Assembly: GCA_964057225.1 (NCBI GenBank)
Contig: CAXKVF010000073.1
Span: 930,001-994,000 of the forward strand
Direction of reading: 5' to 3'
Source: Auanema rhodensis
Taxonomy: Eukaryota > Animalia > Nematoda
Length of the DNA: 64,000 nucleotides
How positions within the stretch are numbered: the stretch's first letter is position 1; each line of letters begins with the position of its first letter. Made by a program: the position numbers and the translations under genes. The notes below the pieces were generated by a model. That model was not told the origin of the DNA, ran no database searches, and saw only the letters and a program-made list of their open reading frames with translations. Below, in pieces: positions 34,501 to 42,899 of this stretch.

Positions 34501-37459
34501 AAAGTTCACGTAAATTTCAAAGTCATGGTTACCATGCACAAATATCAATAAAAATTTGTTTTTAGACTAATATGGACATGGGGAATCTAATTTTGAAAAC
34601 CGCATCTCTTTATCTTTCACGTGAAGCGAGTTACATACCAAGTGCACATCACGTGTACATTTAATTAGCATAAATTAAAGTTCACGTAAATTTCAAAGTC
34701 ATGGTTACCATGCACCAATATCAATAAAAATTTGTTTTTAGACTAATATGGACATGGGGAATCTAATTTTGAAAACCGCATCTCTTTATCTTTCACGTGA
34801 AGCGAGTTACATACCAAGTGCACATCACGTGTACATTTAATTAGCATAAATTAAAGTTCACGTAAATTTCAAAGTCATGGTTACCATGAACCAATATCAA
34901 TAACAATTTGTTTTTAGACTAATATGGACATGGGGAATCTAATTTTGAAAACCGCATCTCTTTATCTTTCACGTGAAGCGAGTTACATACCAAGTGCACA
35001 TCACGTGTACATTTAATTAGCATAAATTAAAGTTCACGTAAATTTCAAAGTCATGGTTACCATGCACAAATATCAATAAAAATTTGTTTTTAGACTAATA
35101 TGGACATGGGGAATCTAATTTTGAAAACCGCATCTCTTCATCTTTCACGTGAAGCGAGTTACATACCAAGTGCACATCACGTGTACATTTAATTAGCATA
35201 AATTAAAGTTCACGTAAATTTCAAAGTCATGGTTACCATGCACAAATATCAATAAAAATTTGTTTTTAGACTAACATGGACATGGGGAATCTAATTTTGA
35301 AAACCGCATCTCTTAATCTTTCACGTGAAGCGAGTTACATACCAAGTGCACATCACGTGTACATTTAATTAGCATAAATTAAAGTTCACGTAAATTTCAA
35401 AGTCATGGTTACCATGCACCAATATCAATAAAAATTTGTTTTTAGACTAATATGGACATGGGGAATCTAATTTTGAAAACCGCATCTCTTTATCTTTCAC
35501 GTGAAGCGAGTTACATACCAAGTGCACATCACGTGTACATTTAATTAGCATAAATTAAAGTTCACGTAAATTTCAAAGTCATGGTTACCATGAACCAATA
35601 TCAATAAAAATTTGTTTTTAGACTAATATGGACATGGGGAATCTAATTTTGAAAACCGCATTTCTTTATCTTTCACGTGAAGCGAGTTACATACCAAGAG
35701 CACATCACGTGTACATTTAATTAGCATAAATTAAAGTTCACGTAAATTTCAAAGTCATGGTTACCATGAAGCAATATCAATAAAAATTTGTTTTTAGACT
35801 AATATGGACATGGGGAATCTAATTTTGCAAACCGCATCTCTTTATCTTTCACGTGAAGCGAGTTACATACCAAGTGCACATCACGTGTACATTTAATTAG
35901 CATAAATTAAAGTTCACGTAAATTTCAAAGTCATGGTTACCATGAAGCAATATCAATAAAAATTTGTGTTGAGACTAATATGGACATGGGGAATCTAATT
36001 TTGAAAACCGCATCTCTTTATCTTTCACGTGAAGCGAGTTACATACCAAGTGCACATCACGTGTACATTTAATTAGCATAAATTAAAGTTCACGTAAATT
36101 TCAAAGTCATGGTTACCATGAAGCAATATCAATAAAAATTTGTTTTCAGACTAATATGGACATGGGGAATCTAATTTTGAAAACCGCATCTCTTTATCTT
36201 TCACGTGAAGCGAGTTACATACCAAGTGCACATCACGTGTACATTTAATTAGCATTAATTAAAGTTCACGTAAATTTCAAAGTCATGGTTACCATGAACC
36301 AATATCAATAAAAATTTGTTTTTAGACTAATATAGACATGAGGAATCTAATTTTGAAAACCGCATCTCTTTATCTTTCACGTGAAGCGAGTTACATACCA
36401 AGTGCACATCACGTGTACATTTAATTAGCATAAATTAAAGTTCACGTAAATTTCAAAGTCATGGTTACCATGAACCAATATCAATAAAAATTTGTTTTTA
36501 GACTAATATGGACATGGGGAATCTAATTTTGAAAACCGCATCTCTTTATCTTTCACGTGAAGCGAGTTATATACCAAGTGCACATCACGTGTACATTTAA
36601 TTAGCATAAATTAAAGTTCACGTAAATTTCAAAGTCATGGTTACCATGAACCAATATCAATAAAAATTTGTTTTTAGACTAATATGGACATGGGGAATCT
36701 AGTTTTGAAAACCGCATCTCTTTATCTTTCACGTGAAGCGAGTTACATACCAAGTGCCCATCACGTGTACATTTAATTAGCATAAATTAAAGTTCACGTA
36801 AATTTCAAAGTCATGGTTACCATGAACCAATATCAATAAAAATTTGTTTTTAGACTAATATGGACATGGGGAATCTAATTTTGAAAACCGCATCTCTTTA
36901 TCTTTCACGTGAAGCGAGTTACATACCAAGTGCACATCACGTGTACATTTAATTAGCATAAATTAAAGTTCACGTAAATTTCAAAGTCATGGTTACCATG
37001 TACCAATATCAATAAAAATTTGTTTTTAGACTAATATGGACATGGGGAATCTAATTTTGAAAACCGCATCTCTTTATCTTTCAAGTGAAGCGAGTTACAT
37101 ACCAAGTGCACATCACGTGTACATTTAATTAGCATAAATTAAAGTTCACGTAAATTTCAAAGTCATGGTTACCATGAACCAATATCAATAAAAATTTGTT
37201 TTTAGACTAATATGGACATGAGGAATCTAATTTTGAAAACCGCATCTCTTCATCTTTCACGTGAAGCGAGTTACATACCAAGTGCACATCACGTGTACAT
37301 TTAATTAGCATAAATTAAAGTTCACGTAAATTTCAAAGTCATGGTTACCATTCACCAATATCAATAAAAATTTGTTTTTAGACTAATATGGACATGGGGA
37401 ATCTAATTTTGAAAACCGCATCTCTTTATCTTTCACGTGAAGCGAGTTACATACCAAGT

Positions 37460-37463
37460 GCAC
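37460..37463 (+). other. Left target-site duplication GCAC (or TGCAC, 37459-37463)
   Basis: The empty monomer reads AAGTGCACATCACG. Here the left flank ends AAGTGCAC and the right flank starts (T)GCACATCACG. Confidence 0.9.
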
Positions 37464-37946
37464 TGTCGCAGTTGGCTATAGTTACCCACCTATGTTTCAT
37501 GTGCTATATAACGTATAGTTATTCACAAACACTCTGTTGAGTACGTTAAACATTATATTATCTTGAGAAGTATGTAAAACATTGATAAAACCTATATCAT
37601 ATAAAATCACATACTTAACTACATATACATAGTTAACTACATGAATATAGTACAGTTGAATTTGTCTTGCAACGACAAGCACGAATATATCATTCTTATT
37701 TCATTTAGACAAGTTCTAACAAAGTTACAACTTTGGGCATGTTGCCAAGATCAACTACCGTAATCAGATTATCAAGCATGCACATCTAAGAGTAGTGATA
37801 AGATCAATTGTTTACCTAAAATTGTTGATATAAGATATTTGTGATATATTTTAATCAGTTTAAGTCTCTCTTTTATTTTCTAATTTTTTAATAAATTCTT
37901 TTATTTTTTTCTTTTTTTTTCTTTTTTATTATACAGTCTTTTGACT
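37464..37946 (+). repeat. 5' LTR (483 bp)
   Basis: Starts TGTCGCAGTTGG and ends CAGTCTTTTGACT. By eye it matches 41087-41565 except for a 4-bp indel (~37625-37631, ACATATACATAG vs ACATATAG) and T37813 vs C41432. Confidence 0.96.
37829..37860 (+). promoter_or_regulatory. Putative LTR core promoter: TATA-like TATAAG plus Inr-like TCAGTT
   Basis: TATAAG at 37829-37834 and TCAGTT at 37855-37860, with the Inr A 28 nt after the TATA start. It lies upstream of AATAAA (37890), as expected for U3-R-U5 order. Motif inference only, in AT-rich sequence. Confidence 0.5.
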
Positions 37947-37961
37947 TGGGGGCCGAACCGG
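37947..37961 (+). promoter_or_regulatory. Primer-binding site, tRNA-Pro
   Basis: TGGGGGCCGAACCGG lies directly after the 5' LTR. It is complementary to ...CCGGUUCGGCCC-CCA, the C. elegans-type tRNA-Pro 3' end as I recall it. The vertebrate/MLV Pro PBS is TGGGGGCTCGTCCGG. Confidence 0.85.
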
Positions 37962-37991
37962 TTCTCTGCTCGATTGATTGTATTTTTTGTT

Positions 37992-38358
37992 AAATAGGGA
38001 AACGTATAGTTTCTTAACCTATTTTTGAGCGTATAGCTCTTGGTGATTTAGTCACAACTCTCCCGTATAGGGTTTTTCCGATTTTTCTGAATTTTTTTTT
38101 TTTTTTTTTTTTTCATAAAATTTTTTTGTGAAAAAAAAAAAAAAAGAAAAAGAGGAAAAAAAAATTTTGCTAAACACTGATTAGGTGTTAACAGAATTTT
38201 TTTTCGGAGAAACTTGAGAGAGTTGAAACTTTCACTTTTGATTTCGAGAAGAAATCAAAATTTTTTGTCATTGTTCGTATAGAATTTTTTTGACAATATT
38301 TTAAATTATTTTTTCGTATAGAAAACTAATAATTTTATTTCCAGTTGACAAACAGTCA
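37992..38358 (+). other. Structured 5' leader with repeated C-GTATA-G stem-loops (candidate packaging/export/translation cis-element)
   Basis: Five CGTATAG hairpins with distinct complementary stems, a C-GAGAA-G hairpin with a 10-bp stem, and long T/A-tract stems containing G-T pairs. Function is inferred from position between the PBS and gag. Confidence 0.7.
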
Positions 38359-38375
38359 TTGCCTATATCTCCATC

Positions 38376-41078
38376 ATGAGTGAGGAACTGGATATCGAAA
38401 TGAACGAGGTAAGACTACCTTTTAATTTTGATAAATTTGAGAGTAATATAGATAACATTTTATCTTTTGCTCAAAGTTTGATTTTAAATCATACTAAAAC
38501 CGGTTGTAGACCAAGAGTCGAAGCCGAGAAAAATCTAGCTAAAATAGCTAAGAATTTAAAAATCTCTAGTTCTGAAATAAAAAGTTTTCAAAAAGAGATT
38601 GATTTGTTAAATCAGATCCACAACATCTGTGATTCTAACAATGATAATGTTTTGATTAAAATTGAAAATTTGATTAATCATAATATTAAACATGATTTTT
38701 TACAGGTTGAACAAGTAACCGATAAAAAATTTATGAATCTGTCAATTACAGATAGTGAAAAAGGTTCGTTAGTAAATTCTAAACTGAATAAATCCTTTTC
38801 TTCTTTACAGCTGAAGAGCTCAGCAAGAAAGAACGAACTTTACAGCCAGGAGTGCAGTTATCAGGGTAAGTCCTTTTACGATATTGCAAAACTCATGAAA
38901 ACCCAGTTACTACCTGAGGTTGAGGCTTATAAGGGTGGATCGTATAGTGAATTCGTTGATTTCACAGAACGATTTAACTATAAATACCCAGATGATGTTT
39001 TTTCTCAACGTGAAAAAAAACTTTTATTCATCAATAAACTCCAAGGCGAGATCAGAAATCGCTATAGAGAGTTACCTGAAGCCATAAAGCAAAGTTCCTT
39101 AGATGTCATAGTGAACAGTTTACGTAGAGAGTCAACCGTTTCACAAAGACAGGGAAGAATGCAGGCTACTGAAAACTTGAAAAGTTTGAAATGGAATAGA
39201 TCCCAGTCGTTAGTAAATTACTGCGATGAGTTAGAAAAACTGACTCAACTGGCTAATCCAGATTTAATTCCTGGTTTATTATCGTTCGAAAGAGCAAATA
39301 AACTGTACCAAGAACTTTGTAATTGTTCTTGTGGAGTTTCCATCCTTGAAAAAATAGAGGATGAGGAGGACGAAGAAATTTACGAAAAAGTAAAACAAAT
39401 CGCCCTCAGATGTGAACGAAATAAGTTAACTCGTTCAATCAATCAATCCAATGAATCCGAGCAGAAACAAAACTTGAGCCGGAAACATTATCCACATATC
39501 TCCGATGAGAGAAGAGTGAGAAACACTAATAATAATGAAATTATTTGTGTGAACTGTAATAAAAAAGGACATACTGCAAACGTATGTTTTAAAAGACAAA
39601 ATGAGAGAATAGAGAATGAAAGTAGACTTAATACTCCTCGAGAACCACCCAGCATTAACAGAAAAGCTGAGAGTTGGAATCGAGCAATCCAAATCACTTC
39701 AAGTGATTTGAGAAACCCCCCATTGTTTGGTAAACCAGCATTAGGGAGAATGACTTTATGTCAAGTCCATATGCATGATGCATTACTAGATACTGGATCG
39801 CAAATTTCGGTCATCAGTTCATCATTGCTAGTTCGAGTAATCGATTCGTTGAAACAAAAAAAAATCAACGCAGATGAAAGAATAGTGGAATTACCATGGA
39901 CTAATAAAAAGTTCATAGTTAACGCATCAGGTGATCAAATGCATTTTGTTGGCGCCGTGCGAATGTCTGTTTTGTGTGATGAAAACCACAAAGAGGCAAT
40001 TGTTGACTTTTTAGTCAGCAAAAACAAAGAAAATCAAATGATATTGGGTACAAATTGTTTGAATTCTTTAGACATATGCTTGAAGTTCAATAAAACTCAA
40101 GCAATGACTTTAAAAAGAGTGTATTTACCTCCTTTTTCGCAAAATCAAGTGTTAGTTTCTTGTGACGCGATTTCAATAAAAAGAGAAATGTTTTTTAACG
40201 CTCTTACTGCTGTTGCAGTTTCGGGAATATATCCCATCAGAGATAATATATCAACCGTGAATTTACATAATAACACGGACAACCCTGTGATAATTAAGGC
40301 AGGAGAATTTATAGGTCACTGGAGATCTGGTTTTGAAACAATAGAGCCGAATCCAGCGATAAAAAAGATCAGTTTGAGAGAAAAACCTGAACACGAATGC
40401 GAAATACAGCATCAGGACTCTTACCGATTGGATAAACGAACTTTTGAGAGTCAAAAGTTTAAAGCTCCTAATTTGGGGTTAGTTAAAAATAATGTGCAGG
40501 TTGCTCTAAATGAAGCCGACCTAACACATACTGATATGGTCACAAAACCAATCAGACAGAAAGTTCGACCTGTTCCTATTAGAGTCAGGAACGGATTTAA
40601 GAAGGTTTTCAAAAATCTTCTAAACAAGAGAATGAATGGACCTAGCAATAGTGCTATGGCTCTTCCTATTGTTTCAAAAGAAGATAAAAATAGGAATGAT
40701 AAAACCAAAAAAAGGTTTAAATCATACTATGATAAAAAGAGTGAGAAAAAATCCGATTCACCAAAAATAAGTGATCGAGTTTTCATTAAAATACCTTTTG
40801 AAAAAAGAGGTGATCCGAATAAGAAACAAGCTTTCGATTTTCGAGGACCGTACAGAGTGATATCAGAATATAACACTTCTGCATTTATTAATGAACTAGA
40901 GGAGAACAAAAAACCTTTAAAAGTTCAAACAGACTTACTATACAAAATTCCTGACCAATTGGGAATAGTAACTGTTAAAACAAAACGTAATAGAAAAAAA
41001 ATTACGTGTAATCATATCTGTGAAAGTTTTTCCTTTAATGAAGAGATTTTACTTCTCGAGGACGAGAATTTTTTGTAG
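38376..41078 (+). CDS. Gag-protease polyprotein fused in frame to an RT N-terminal remnant and the integrase C-terminal (GPY/F) domain, 900 aa
   Basis: Uninterrupted ORF. Capsid-like LPEVEAYKGGSYSEFVDFTERF (~aa179-200), CCHC knuckle aa391-404, LLDTGSQIS (D472) and ILGTN (aa556), KPIRQKVRPVP...PSNSAMALPIV (aa724-766), YYDKK...DRVFIK...FRGPYRVI (aa784-829). No YxDD, RNase H, HHCC or DDE motifs seen. Confidence 0.92.
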   Translation: MSEELDIEMNEVRLPFNFDKFESNIDNILSFAQSLILNHTKTGCRPRVEAEKNLAKIAKNLKISSSEIKSFQKEIDLLNQIHNICDSNNDNVLIKIENLINHNIKHDFLQVEQVTDKKFMNLSITDSEKGSLVNSKLNKSFSSLQLKSSARKNELYSQECSYQGKSFYDIAKLMKTQLLPEVEAYKGGSYSEFVDFTERFNYKYPDDVFSQREKKLLFINKLQGEIRNRYRELPEAIKQSSLDVIVNSLRRESTVSQRQGRMQATENLKSLKWNRSQSLVNYCDELEKLTQLANPDLIPGLLSFERANKLYQELCNCSCGVSILEKIEDEEDEEIYEKVKQIALRCERNKLTRSINQSNESEQKQNLSRKHYPHISDERRVRNTNNNEIICVNCNKKGHTANVCFKRQNERIENESRLNTPREPPSINRKAESWNRAIQITSSDLRNPPLFGKPALGRMTLCQVHMHDALLDTGSQISVISSSLLVRVIDSLKQKKINADERIVELPWTNKKFIVNASGDQMHFVGAVRMSVLCDENHKEAIVDFLVSKNKENQMILGTNCLNSLDICLKFNKTQAMTLKRVYLPPFSQNQVLVSCDAISIKREMFFNALTAVAVSGIYPIRDNISTVNLHNNTDNPVIIKAGEFIGHWRSGFETIEPNPAIKKISLREKPEHECEIQHQDSYRLDKRTFESQKFKAPNLGLVKNNVQVALNEADLTHTDMVTKPIRQKVRPVPIRVRNGFKKVFKNLLNKRMNGPSNSAMALPIVSKEDKNRNDKTKKRFKSYYDKKSEKKSDSPKISDRVFIKIPFEKRGDPNKKQAFDFRGPYRVISEYNTSAFINELEENKKPLKVQTDLLYKIPDQLGIVTVKTKRNRKKITCNHICESFSFNEEILLLEDENFL
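39546..39587 (+). other. Gag nucleocapsid CCHC zinc knuckle
   Basis: CVNCNKKGHTANVC fits C-x2-C-x4-H-x4-C. Confidence 0.95.
39741..40070 (+). other. Retropepsin-type aspartic protease domain (boundaries approximate)
   Basis: Active-site ALLDTGSQISVI (GAT at 39789), flap-like IVNASG and C-terminal ILGTNCL. Confidence 0.92.
40503..40673 (+). pseudogene. Remnant of the reverse transcriptase N-terminus
   Basis: ALNEADLTHTDMVTKPIRQKVRPVP...LLNKRMNGPSNSAMALPIV resembles the gypsy RT start (PI.Q..R..P ... I.PS.SPWASPIV). The downstream RT motifs are missing. Confidence 0.8.
40700..40952 (+). other. Integrase C-terminal GPY/F (SH3-like) module
   Basis: KSYYDKK...KISDRVFIK...KKQAFDFRGPYRVI...VQTDLL matches the gypsy IN tail pattern K..YD...GD.V....KL...w.GPY.V...vh.d.L. 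GPY is at 40845-40853. Confidence 0.85.
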
Positions 41079-41086
41079 GACGGGGA
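41077..41086 (+). promoter_or_regulatory. Polypurine tract (plus-strand primer)
   Basis: AGGACGGGGA lies directly before the TG of the 3' LTR and overlaps the TAG stop (41076-41078). Confidence 0.75.
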
Positions 41087-41565
41087 TGTCGCAGTTGGCT
41101 ATAGTTACCCACCTATGTTTCATGTGCTATATAACGTATAGTTATTCACAAACACTCTGTTGAGTACGTTAAACATTATATTATCTTGAGAAGTATGTAA
41201 AACATTGATAAAACCTATATCATATAAAATCACATACTTAACTACATATAGTTAACTACATGAATATAGTACAGTTGAATTTGTCTTGCAACGACAAGCA
41301 CGAATATATCATTCTTATTTCATTTAGACAAGTTCTAACAAAGTTACAACTTTGGGCATGTTGCCAAGATCAACTACCGTAATCAGATTATCAAGCATGC
41401 ACATCTAAGAGTAGTGATAAGATCAATTGTTCACCTAAAATTGTTGATATAAGATATTTGTGATATATTTTAATCAGTTTAAGTCTCTCTTTTATTTTCT
41501 AATTTTTTAATAAATTCTTTTATTTTTTTCTTTTTTTTTCTTTTTTATTATACAGTCTTTTGACT
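41087..41565 (+). repeat. 3' LTR (479 bp)
   Basis: Direct repeat of 37464-37946. The last base (T41565) could belong to either the LTR or the TSD. Confidence 0.96.
41509..41514 (+). terminator. Putative polyadenylation signal AATAAA in the 3' LTR (copy at 37890-37895)
   Basis: AATAAA followed by T-rich tracts about 50 nt before the LTR end. Confidence 0.55.
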
Positions 41566-41569
41566 GCAC
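41566..41569 (+). other. Right target-site duplication GCAC (or TGCAC, 41565-41569)
   Basis: Duplicate of 37460-37463 directly after the 3' LTR. Confidence 0.9.
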
Positions 41570-42899
41570 ATCACGTGTACATTTAATTAGCATAAATTAA
41601 AGTTCACGTAAATTTCAAAGTCATGGTTACCATGCACCAATATCAATAAAAATTTGTTTTTAGACTAATATGGACATGAGGAATCTAATTTTGAAAACCG
41701 CATCTCTTTATCTTTCACGTGAAGCGAGTTACATACCAAGTGCACATCACGTGTACATTTAATTAGCATAAATTAAAGTTCACGTAAATTTCAAAGTCAT
41801 GGTTACCATGAACCAATATCAATAAAAATTTGTTTTTAGACTAATATGGACATGGGGAATCTAATTTTGAAAACCGCATCTCTTTATCTTTCACGTGAAG
41901 CGAGTTACATACCAAGTGCACATCACGTGTATTATTTAATTAGCATAAATTAAAGTTCACGTAAATTTCAAAGTCATGGTTACCATGAACTAATATCAAT
42001 AAAAATTTGTTTTTAGACTAATATGGACATGGGGAATCTAATTTTGAAAACCGCATCTCTTTATCTTTCACGTGAAGCGAGTTACATACCAAGTGCACAT
42101 CACGTGTATTATTTAATTAGCATAAATTAAAGTTCACGTAAATTTCAAAGTCATGGTTACCATGAACTAATATCAATAAAAATTTGTTTTTAGACTAATA
42201 TGGACATGGGGAATCTAATTTTGAAAACCGCATCTCTTTATCTTTCACGTGAAGCGAGTTACATACCAAGTGCACATCACGTGTACATTTAATTAGCATA
42301 AATTAAAGTTCACGTAAATTTCAAAGTCATGGTTACCATGAACCAATATCAATAAAAATTTGTTTTTAGACTAATATGGACATGGGGAATCTAATTTTGA
42401 AAACCGCATCTCTTTATCTTTCACGTGAAGCGAGTTACATACCAAGTGCACATCACGTGTACATTTAATTAGCATAAATTAAAGTTCACGTAAATTTCAA
42501 AGTCATGGTTACCATGAACCAATATCAATAAAAATTTGTTTTTAGACTAATATGGACATGGGGAATCTAATTTTGAAAACCGCATCTCTTTATCTTTCAC
42601 GTGGAGCGAGTTACATACCAAGTGCACATCACGTGTACATTTAATTAGCATAAATTAAAGTTCACGTAAATTTCAAAGTCATGGTTACCATGCACCAATA
42701 TCAATAAAAATTTGTTTTTAGACTAATATGGACATGGGGAATCTAATTTTGAAAACCGCATCTCTTTATCTTTCACGTGAAGCGAGTTACATACCAAGTG
42801 CACATCACGTGTACATTTAATTAGCATAAATTAAAGTTCACGTAATTTTCAAAGTCATGGTTACCATGAACCAATATCAATAAAAATTTGTTTTTAGAC

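What the first reader, a model, noticed from the sequence alone, without database searches (positions are those of the whole stretch)
37992..38335. Array of C-GUAUA-G pentaloop hairpins with different but complementary stems in the retroelement leader
Seen: CGTATAG occurs five times in ~340 nt, each time closing a hairpin with a different stem. These are (AAATAGG)GAAAC-GTATA-GTTTC..(CCTATTT) at 37992-38024; GAGC-GTATA-GCTC at 38027-38039; CCC-GTATA-GGG at 38062-38072; TTC-GTATA-GAA at 38274-38284 inside TTGTCA/TGACAA; and TTTTC-GTATA-GAAAA at 38311-38325 inside AAATTATT/AATAATTT. A constant loop with variable but paired stems is not what plain duplication produces; it suggests selection on a structure-plus-loop recognition element. 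Known: GUAUA fits the GNRNA pentaloop class (lambda boxB type) read by basic peptides, and retroelement packaging signals lie between the PBS and gag. Inference: a multivalent protein-binding array for packaging, dimerisation or export, possibly how this RT/IN-less element engages helper machinery. I know of no description of this motif.
Basis: partly seen in the sequence, partly recalled or inferred. Interest (0 to 1): 0.85.

Follow-up and report, generated by a model that had tools for sequence, protein, structure and literature searches.

The report
Conserved pentaloop hairpin array, retroelement leader
The untranslated leader of a nematode Cer1-like LTR retrotransposon holds an array of small RNA hairpins with the same five-base loop on different stems; related elements keep them through compensating stem changes, so they are probably docking sites for an element protein such as Gag or an RNA-export factor.

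Summary
CGTATAG occurs five times in the 429-nt leader, always on the sense strand and always closing a hairpin (0 of 5000 dinucleotide shuffles reach this). The element is a Cer1-like Ty3/gypsy retrotransposon of a nematode. It has lost its RT and IN cores and sits in a 176-bp satellite.

Four other families in the same genome share its tRNA-Pro primer site: one non-autonomous sister and three families with long gag-pol frames (34-39% Gag identity to the window element). All carry a homologous four-hairpin domain just after that site:
- 93% of pair cells are paired.
- 11 pairs show changes on both sides.
- Slid controls give 30-49% paired.
- RNAalifold finds the same fold.

The three pentaloops read G-N-A-U-A and are closed by C-G in 14 of 15 cases. 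The two non-autonomous families carry 6-7 such hairpins, against 1-3 in the others, plus one in U3.

There is no Rfam match, and I found no paper describing the motif. Selection on structure plus loop is shown; the binding partner is inferred. I rank Gag packaging first, a CERV-like export factor second and loop-loop dimerisation third. No RNA-level or binding data exist.

The parts
37464..37946 (+). 5' LTR (about 483 bp)
   Evidence: Matches 41087-41565. Flanked by the 4-5 bp target duplication GCAC/TGCAC in the 176-bp satellite.
37508..37522 (+). U3 hairpin ATAAC-GUAUA-GUUAU. It is repeated at 41131-41145, which is the copy carried by the genomic RNA.
   Evidence: Family E has TAAC-GCATA-GTTA about 45 nt from its LTR start, the same position.
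37947..37961 (+). Primer binding site TGGGGGCCGAACCGG (tRNA-Pro type)
   Evidence: Its first 14 bases equal the Cer1 PBS TGGGGGCCGAACCG reported in PMC3315495. Shared by all families.
37992..38024 (+). HP1: outer stem, inner stem GAAAC/GUUUC, loop GUAUA and a 4-nt 3' bulge
   Evidence: Folds. Seven pairs show two-sided changes across families.
38027..38039 (+). HP2: GAGC-GUAUA-GCUC
   Evidence: three pairs with two-sided changes.
38043..38055 (+). HPx: GUGA-UUUAG-UCAC, with a different loop ending in AG
   Evidence: Stem nearly invariant in A-D, replaced by UUGG/CCAA in E.
38062..38072 (+). HP3: CCC-GUAUA-GGG
   Evidence: Forms in local folds but not in the full-leader minimum-energy fold. Pairs are kept across families.
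38236..38260 (+). 10-bp hairpin with loop GAGAA closed by C-G
   Evidence: The 28 bases 38236-38263 that hold it are identical in subfamilies A and B.
38265..38296 (+). HP4: UUC-GUAUA-GAA inside UUGUCA/UGACAA
   Evidence: Subfamily B lengthens the inner stem through changes on both strands.
38303..38335 (+). HP5: UUUUC-GUAUA-GAAAA inside an A/U outer stem
38346..38358 (+). HP6: UGAC-AAACA-GUCA. The loop is GAAUA or GAAAA in subfamily B copies.
38333..38344 (+). 3' splice-acceptor-like TTTTATTTCCAG, 31 nt before the gag ATG. This is a possible trans-splice site that would remove the hairpin leader.
   Evidence: Conserved in A and B, with similar sites in C, D and E. Cer1 elements have a consensus splice acceptor before the initiator ATG (PMC10309623) and Cer1 uses an SL1 trans-splice site (PMC3315495). 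Use of this site here is inferred only.
38376..41078 (+). 900-aa ORF: Gag with one CCHC knuckle, a DTGS protease, the start of RT, then the integrase C-terminal GPY region
   Evidence: dN/dS is 0.32 against subfamily B.
41077..41086 (+). Polypurine tract AGGACGGGGA
   Evidence: Directly abuts the 3' LTR.
41087..41565 (+). 3' LTR

Best explanation
The hairpins are a conserved cis-acting RNA domain of the genomic-RNA leader of a Cer1-like Ty3/gypsy retrotransposon lineage.

Shown:
- A four-hairpin module lies just 3' of the tRNA-Pro primer site. It consists of a two-tier HP1 with a 4-nt 3' bulge, then HP2, HPx and HP3.
- The module is kept in five families of this genome through compensating stem changes.
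- Three of its loops are pentaloops closed by C-G that read G-N-A-U-A.
- The two non-autonomous families (A, which is the window element, and B) add a second cluster near the gag start and one copy in U3. That gives 6-7 sense-strand copies in the leader.

Inferred:
- Each hairpin presents the same loop as a docking site, so the array binds several copies of one element-encoded RNA-binding protein.
- The most likely partner is Gag, through its zinc-knuckle region, marking the unspliced RNA for selection and packaging into particles.
- The larger number of hairpins in the RT/IN-less lineage would help its RNA compete for particles that carry a helper's polymerase.
For: - Chance is excluded: 0 of 5000 shuffles.
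- The motif is strand-specific: 0 antisense instances in A-E with the GNAUA loop.
- Covariation across families A-E: 93.2% of cells paired, 11 pairs with two-sided changes, 0 of 500 shuffles as high, slid controls 30-49% paired.
- RNAalifold independently predicts the same four hairpins. Single-sequence folds give all four in A, B and E.
- Loop tally over 15 homologous loops: G1 13, A3 12, U4 14, A5 13, closing C-G 14.
- Hairpin elements are 90% identical between A and B, against 74% outside them.
- A covariance model finds at least 40 copies in the genome, all in families A-E and on the element strand; the copies read here lie next to the primer site.
- The position between PBS and gag is where retroviral packaging hairpins lie. 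GACG-tetraloop hairpins of alpha- and gammaretroviruses are a precedent for a constant loop used in packaging (PMC516450).
- In Cer1, Gag associates rapidly with newly exported genomic RNA (PMC10309623).
- The window element keeps its own gag under purifying selection.
Against: - There are no binding, probing or expression data. No public RNA run holds the element.
- Only five families, about four independent lineages, all from one genome.
- Family E loops depart from GNAUA, and one loop each in C and D does too.
- HP3 does not form in the minimum-energy fold of the whole leader. In C and D the outer strand of HP1 has an alternative partner.
- The hairpins lie upstream of the first splice donor, so on their own they would not tell unspliced RNA from cis-spliced RNA.
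- Relatives from strongylid nematodes (at most 32% Gag identity) lack the domain.
Confidence: 0.45

Rival explanations
1. The array is the response element of a Rev-like export factor. In Cer1, the spliced-mRNA product CERV is needed to export unspliced genomic RNA. It co-localises with that RNA and is predicted to form rings of 5 or more subunits with a possible RNA-binding Cys loop. Several identical hairpins would suit such a multimer. The window element seems to lack the env-position ORF that encodes the C-terminal half of CERV, so it would use a helper's factor through the shared motif.
For: - CERV's role, ring model and unknown RNA target are described in PMC10309623.
- The motif is shared between the non-autonomous families A and B and the related families C, D and E.
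- The window element's ORF ends about 70 aa after the integrase GPY motif, and no other long frame exists.
- Conserved splice-like sites in the first 500 nt of gag recall cerv exons 1-3.
Against: - No CERV homologue was identified in any family here. I could not fetch their 3' halves.
- The hairpins are not inside an intron, so spliced RNA would carry them too.
- It is not known whether Cer1 itself has such hairpins.
Confidence: 0.2
2. The loops drive RNA dimerisation or 5'-3' contacts by loop-loop kissing. UAUA within GUAUA is self-complementary, and identical loops on two RNAs, or in the leader and in U3, could pair, as GACG tetraloops do in gammaretroviruses.
For: UAUA is palindromic and present in every GUAUA loop of the window element. 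Family D's HP1 loop UAAUU holds AAUU. GACG tetraloops contribute to dimer stability (PMC516450).
Against: Most homologous loops are not self-complementary: GAAUA, GCAUA, GCUAA, GUUUA and GAUUA. What is conserved is G1, A3, U4, A5 and the C-G closure, not a palindrome. Four A-U pairs in a 5-nt loop would be weak and strained.
Confidence: 0.1
3. The hairpins bind a host factor or act on the RNA itself, in translation control, stability, localisation in germ cells or suppression of splicing, with no element protein involved.
For: A 430-nt structured leader precedes gag (z-score -9.2). In λ boxB, a GNRNA pentaloop takes a GNRA-like fold that a peptide reads (from my own knowledge, not checked here).
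Against: Nothing specific points to this. The motif clusters nowhere else in the genome, whereas a general host-factor site would be expected on host RNAs as well.
Confidence: 0.12
4. The palindromes act as double-stranded DNA sites, or are by-products of local duplication with no function.
For: HP1 shares an 11-mer with the U3 hairpin, and HP4 shares one with HP5, so duplication did take part. The U3 copy lies in promoter DNA. The gypsy leader carries protein-binding DNA repeats (from my own knowledge).
Against: The half-sites differ between copies while the unpaired centre is constant, which is the reverse of a dimeric DNA site. Orientation is always sense. Stems covary across families that cannot otherwise be aligned there.
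Confidence: 0.03

Closest known systems
GACG-tetraloop hairpins in the leaders of alpha- and gammaretroviruses (for example the MLV packaging region)
   Same: Hairpins in the retroelement leader with a constant loop. They are tied to packaging and help dimer stability (PMC516450). That their stems differ is from my own recollection, not checked here.
   Different: Here the loop is a pentaloop, G-N-A-U-A closed by C-G. There are three copies per core module and up to seven per leader, plus one in U3. The host is a nematode Ty3/gypsy element. No functional data exist.
Cer1 of C. elegans (Ty3/gypsy) with its Gag and CERV proteins
   Same: Same primer site (TGGGGGCCGAACCG, tRNA-Pro). Related families here have a single long gag-pol frame. 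A splice acceptor precedes the ATG, and splice sites lie in the 5' part of gag. The host is a nematode.
   Different: The window element has lost the RT/RNase H/IN cores and has no env-position ORF. Its Gag has one CCHC knuckle, where Cer1 has three. Cis-acting RNA signals of Cer1 have not been described, so no direct comparison is possible.
λ and P22 boxB hairpins bound by N peptides (GNRNA pentaloops)
   Same: A short stem with a five-base loop starting with G and ending with A. GUAUA, GAAUA, GCAUA and GAGAA all fit GNRNA and could take a GNRA-like fold with one base flipped out.
   Different: The setting is a eukaryotic retroelement, with no boxA and no N-like arginine-rich peptide identified. 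U4 is the best-conserved loop base here, whereas I recall the flipped-out base of λ boxB as variable. Family E loops do not fit GNRNA.
HIV-1 Rev response element and the MPMV constitutive transport element
   Same: Structured RNA with repeated sites that recruit several copies of an export factor to unspliced retroviral RNA.
   Different: Those elements are long branched structures or paired internal loops located in or near introns. This one is a string of small hairpins in the 5' leader.

Membership tests
Cer1-like Ty3/gypsy LTR retrotransposon | PBS complementary to tRNA-Pro, TGGGGGCCGAACCG, directly after the 5' LTR | tested here: met
   37947-37961 reads TGGGGGCCGAACCGG. The Cer1 sequence comes from PMC3315495.
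Cer1-like Ty3/gypsy LTR retrotransposon | Single long gag-pol reading frame with the Ty3/gypsy domain order | tested here: inconclusive
   Related families show open frames of up to 2114-2134 aa, and RVT_1 follows gag-PR. The window element itself has an internal deletion. The integrase part of the relatives was not fetched.
Cer1-like Ty3/gypsy LTR retrotransposon | Nematode host | tested here: met
   TTAGGC repeats abut one truncated copy. All named Gag relatives are from strongylid nematodes.
Retroelement packaging (Psi-type) hairpins | Located on the genomic RNA between the PBS and gag | tested here: met
   All leader hairpins lie in 37992-38358, between the PBS (37947-37961) and the ATG at 38376.
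Retroelement packaging (Psi-type) hairpins | Structure and loop conserved among related elements | tested here: met
Retroelement packaging (Psi-type) hairpins | Bound by Gag/NC and required for encapsidation | not testable with these tools
   Needs binding and packaging assays.
boxB-type GNRNA pentaloop | Loop fits G-N-R-N-A on a short stem | tested here: inconclusive
   Met by every C-G-closed G...A pentaloop hairpin of A and B and by most loops of C and D. Not met by the three loops of family E, by UAAUU in D or by AAAUC in C.
boxB-type GNRNA pentaloop | Part of a phage nut site read by an arginine-rich N peptide | tested here: not met
   The setting is a eukaryotic retroelement. Pfam finds only weak aspartic-protease hits in the ORF. 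It may resemble boxB in fold but is not a member.
Any curated RNA family (Rfam 15) | Match to a covariance model | tested here: not met
   No match at E up to 1 over 37400-41600, both strands.

The most novel reading that the evidence does not exclude
The G-N-A-U-A hairpin array is the so far unknown RNA handle by which Cer1-type retroelements have their genomic RNA recognised by Gag or by a CERV-type export factor. A polymerase-less parasite lineage has multiplied this handle, to 6-7 copies plus one in U3 against 1-3 in the related families with long gag-pol frames. This would let it outcompete its helpers for export or packaging, much as defective interfering genomes amplify their packaging signals.
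Probability: 0.25. Interest if true: 0.8.

Novelty: new variant of a known kind. Interest (0 to 1): 0.6.

Why it matters
Cer1-type elements form capsids in nematode germ cells, and work on Cer1 shows that both Gag and the export factor CERV act on the genomic RNA. The RNA signals they read have not been described. This module gives a concrete candidate that is supported by covariation: a short stem, C-G closure and a G-N-A-U-A loop. It can be tested directly by binding and structure probing.

The module also offers a natural comparison between related families with long gag-pol frames, which carry few copies, and a long-lived non-autonomous lineage that keeps its gag and carries many. That comparison bears on how parasitic retroelements compete for helper machinery. 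The module is absent from Rfam.

Tried and rejected
- Rfam scan of the whole element on both strands: nothing.
- Paper searches for pentaloop plus retrotransposon plus packaging, and for GUAUA hairpins: nothing relevant.
- Word-index protein search with the Gag region: one weak hit only. The exhaustive profile search gave 428 relatives, all at most 32% identical to families A-E.
- Leaders of four of those relatives (L086, L087, L088, L090) carry a similar primer site but no match to the domain, by eye or by covariance model. A fifth locus, L089, had no such primer site. One look-up (P0005) found no contig.
- RNA evidence: no RNA run holds the element. Contigs of three DNA runs from organisms A, B and C carry near-identical copies with no change in the loops. 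The joint 37961>38198 seen there is a degenerate fragment followed by a tandem repeat, not a working variant.
I did not try another route. For the same reason the 3' halves of families C, D and E, and any CERV-like ORF there, were not examined.
- Complementarity of the loops to U5 (TATAC near the LTR end) is not conserved in C and D, so I dropped it. I compared the stems with the tRNA-Pro arms only from memory, so that idea stays untested.
- Earlier notes of this scan held nothing on this motif.
The consensus line that the alignment tool prints is not reproduced here.

Full report
**Setting**

The window is a 176-bp satellite array of about 32% G+C, interrupted once at about 37464-41565. The insert is an LTR element with these parts:
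- LTRs at 37464-37946 and 41087-41565.
- A 4-5 bp target duplication, GCAC/TGCAC.
- The primer site TGGGGGCCGAACCGG at 37947-37961.
- A 429-nt leader.
- One 900-aa ORF at 38376-41078.
- The polypurine tract AGGACGGGGA at 41077-41086.

The ORF has a CCHC knuckle, a DTGS protease (weak Pfam hits) and the first motifs of RT. It then runs straight into an integrase C-terminal GPY region.

The primer site contains the 14-base site reported for Cer1 of C. elegans, which is complementary to tRNA-Pro (PMC3315495). Three observations place the element as a Cer1-like Ty3/gypsy element of a nematode:
- Related families in the genome show single open frames of up to 2114-2134 aa, with RVT_1 after gag-PR.
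- All named Gag relatives elsewhere are from strongylid nematodes.
- One truncated copy is joined to TTAGGC repeats.

**The observation**

CGTATAG occurs at 38003, 38030, 38064, 38276 and 38315. Each time it closes a hairpin, with contiguous stems of 7, 4, 3, 4 and 5 pairs when G-U pairs are allowed. HP1, HP4 and HP5 also have outer stems. All 8 copies in the window are on the + strand. The LTR copies also form hairpins (ATAAC-GTATA-GTTAT), and only the ORF copy at 38941 has no stem.

None of 5000 dinucleotide shuffles of the leader gives five hairpins with one common closing pair and loop. Genome-wide, pairs of CGTATAG within 60 nt are almost confined to this family.

One is a 10-bp stem with loop GAGAA at 38236-38260. 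The other is TGAC-AAACA-GTCA at 38346-38358.

The minimum-energy fold of the whole leader contains HP1, HP2, the GAGAA hairpin, HP4 and HP5 (z = -9.2). HP3 forms only in local folds.

**Copies and a sister subfamily**

The genome (181 Mb) has nine near-full copies of the leader. Five are 92-100% identical to the window copy and form subfamily A. Four are 77-78% identical and form subfamily B.

A and B share almost identical LTRs, and their ORFs differ mostly at the 5' end. dS is 0.35 for the first 150 codons and falls to 0.01 at the 3' end, so the two are recombinant mosaics. Overall dN/dS is 0.32, and B has the same 900-aa frame. The polymerase-less lineage has therefore kept gag-PR under selection.

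After the primer site, hairpin elements are 90% identical between A and B, against 74% outside them, or 59% when gaps are counted (Fisher p = 8e-5). In B:
- The loops of HP1, HP4 and HP5 are unchanged.
- The HP2 loop is GAAUA and the HP3 loop is GCAUA, so only loop position 2 changes.
- One A-U pair in HP2 becomes G-U.
- The HP4 stem is lengthened by changes on both strands.
- The HP6 loop becomes GAAUA or GAAAA.

**More distant families**

A Gag search of the genome finds three further families, C, D and E. C and D match Gag at 37-39%, E at 34-36%. In the alignment of the first 575 residues, identity to the window element is 34%, 35% and 24%. All three have the same primer site.

Their leaders cannot be aligned to A overall. 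Even so, each has the same module shortly after the primer site:
- HP1, with an outer stem stacked directly on an inner stem and a 4-nt bulge on the 3' side only.
- HP2.
- HPx, a small hairpin that reads GUGA-NNNAG-UCAC in A-D and UUGG-UUUUAG-CCAA in E.
- HP3.

I aligned the five modules with MAFFT, without fitting them to any structure. On that alignment:
- 93.2% of pair cells form standard pairs.
- 11 of 27 pairs show changes on both sides, in 21 cells.
- No shuffle of 500 reaches these values.
- Sliding the 3' partners by 1-3 columns gives 30-49% pairing and at most 6 such pairs.
- RNAalifold predicts the same four hairpins on its own.
- Single-sequence folds give all four in A, B and E. 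In D, HP2, HPx and the inner stem of HP1 form. C is ambiguous, because the outer 3' strand of HP1 (AACCC) can also pair with the 3' strand of HP3.

The fifteen homologous pentaloops, by family, are listed below. For family C the majority copy is used; only copy L031 has AAAUA in HP2.

| Hairpin | A | B | C | D | E |
|---|---|---|---|---|---|
| HP1 | GUAUA | GUAUA | GAAUA | UAAUU | GCUAA |
| HP2 | GUAUA | GAAUA | GAAUA | GAAUA | GUUUA |
| HP3 | GUAUA | GCAUA | AAAUC | GAAUA | GAUUA |

The tally is G1 13/15, A3 12/15, U4 14/15 and A5 13/15. The closing pair is C-G in 14 of 15 cases.

A covariance model of the module finds at least 40 copies in the genome. All are in families A-E and on the element's strand. 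It finds none in three more distant families with the same primer site, nor in five loci from strongylid relatives.

C-G-closed G...A pentaloop hairpins number 6 in the leader of A and 7 in B. The counts are 1 in C (2 in its majority copy), 1 in D (plus one with U-G closure) and 3 in E. With the GNAUA loop there are none on the antisense strand of any family.

The U3 hairpin of A (44 nt into the LTR) has a counterpart in E, TAAC-GCAUA-GUUA, about 45 nt into its LTR.

**What this shows and what it does not**

The data show selection for pairing and for a loop pattern on the sense strand, that is, on the RNA. A double-stranded DNA site is unlikely because the half-sites vary while the unpaired centre is constant.

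The data do not show what binds the hairpins. No RNA run holds the element. Contigs of DNA runs under three organism labels carry near-identical copies and add no loop variation.

**Mechanism**

I rank the explanations as follows.

1. Gag recognition, about 0.45. The position between PBS and gag, the repeated identical loops, the retained gag, and the precedent of GACG-loop hairpins used in packaging (PMC516450) all fit. So does the rapid association of Cer1 Gag with exported genomic RNA (PMC10309623).
2. The target of a CERV-like export factor, about 0.2. Cer1 needs CERV to export unspliced RNA. CERV is predicted to form rings of five or more subunits with a possible RNA-binding loop, and its RNA target is unknown. 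The window element lacks the env-position ORF that encodes CERV's C-terminal half in Cer1, so a shared motif would let it use a helper's factor.
3. A host factor, or a role in translation or stability, about 0.12. Nothing specific supports this.
4. Loop-loop dimerisation through the UAUA palindrome, about 0.1. The palindrome is not kept in relatives.
5. A DNA site or neutral duplication, about 0.03.

The boxB-like GNRNA fold is a reasonable structural guess for A-D, where G-N-A-(U)-A would give a GNRA-like loop with U4 flipped out. It does not hold for family E, and it is not a membership claim.

**Comparison and novelty**

The closest known kind is the retroviral leader hairpin with a constant loop. 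This case differs in four ways: the loop type, the number of copies, the extra U3 copy and the host lineage. There is no Rfam family, and I found no paper on it. I rate it a new variant of a known kind, with interest 0.6.

The most novel reading still open is that the polymerase-less lineage multiplied the handle to outcompete its helpers. I give that a probability of about 0.25.

**Limits**

- There are five families from one genome.
- E-values from the home-made covariance model are rough.
- The shuffle control ignores relatedness, though the slid control does not.
- Function is wholly inferred.

Noticed in passing
L061-L065 (G000:C8, about 26309097-26309220): A truncated copy of the element ends right after HP3 and is joined directly to about seven TTAGGC repeats, the nematode telomere unit. 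This may be an interstitial telomere tract or a healed break inside the element.
   Followed up: no
window 37459-37463 and 41565-41569; L002, L008, L009: Several family A/B copies sit inside the same 176-bp satellite. The copy on contig C82 (L002) is at the identical position of the monomer (same flank ...CCAAGTGCAC). L008 and L009 are at another position. This could be targeted insertion or amplification together with the array.
   Followed up: partly
window 38409, 38699-38705, 38866 (also 38805-38811, 38840-38846): Strong splice donor-like sites (GAG|GTAAGA, AGG|GTAAGT) and acceptor-like sites (TTTTTTACAG) lie in the first 500 nt of the ORF. The two donors and the first acceptor are kept in subfamily B, although this is the most diverged part. 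The interval 38409-38705 is 297 nt, so it is in frame. This recalls cerv exons 1-3 of Cer1.
   Followed up: partly
window 38333-38344: An acceptor-like TTTTATTTCCAG lies 31 nt before the gag ATG, with similar sites before the ATG in families C, D and E. It is a possible spliced-leader site that would strip the hairpin leader from translated mRNA.
   Followed up: partly
window 38086-38168: A run of about 22 U followed by A-rich runs folds into a long A-U hairpin in the middle of the leader. Subfamily B keeps a U-run and an A-run of different lengths, and the run lengths vary between copies.
   Followed up: no
window LTRs versus L006-L009; L004, L005: Subfamilies A and B have nearly identical LTRs (only scattered differences in the alignment) but leaders only 78% identical. 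Copies L004 and L005 carry the A-type leader behind an unrelated LTR that shares only the last 16 nt. Recombination between elements is frequent.
   Followed up: partly
L087:29-262; L088:100-310; L090 about 1548-1970: Leaders of distant relatives from other nematodes carry their own repeated short motifs: GTACGG(A/T)A five times in L087, GACC-CAGAAG(T)-GGTC-like units three to four times in L088, and TGATCGA-type palindromes in L090. Repeated leader motifs may be general in this clade.
   Followed up: partly
L079 (reverse strand), locus positions 79, 421, 1105, 1446: Upstream of a family E copy, a repeat with a period of about 342 bp carries an AAC-GTCTA-GTT hairpin in each of the four units seen.
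   Followed up: no
G000:C7:17696293-17701602: Eight matches to the complement of the primer site lie outside any element, in pairs 80 bp apart. They look like a cluster of tRNA-Pro genes, which would be the presumed primer. I could not fetch them.
   Followed up: no
L031:278-353, L038:379-461: In families C and D the 3' strand of the HP1 outer stem (AACCC) can pair either with the upstream GGGUU or with the 3' strand of HP3 (GGGU), so two alternative folds are possible.
   Followed up: no
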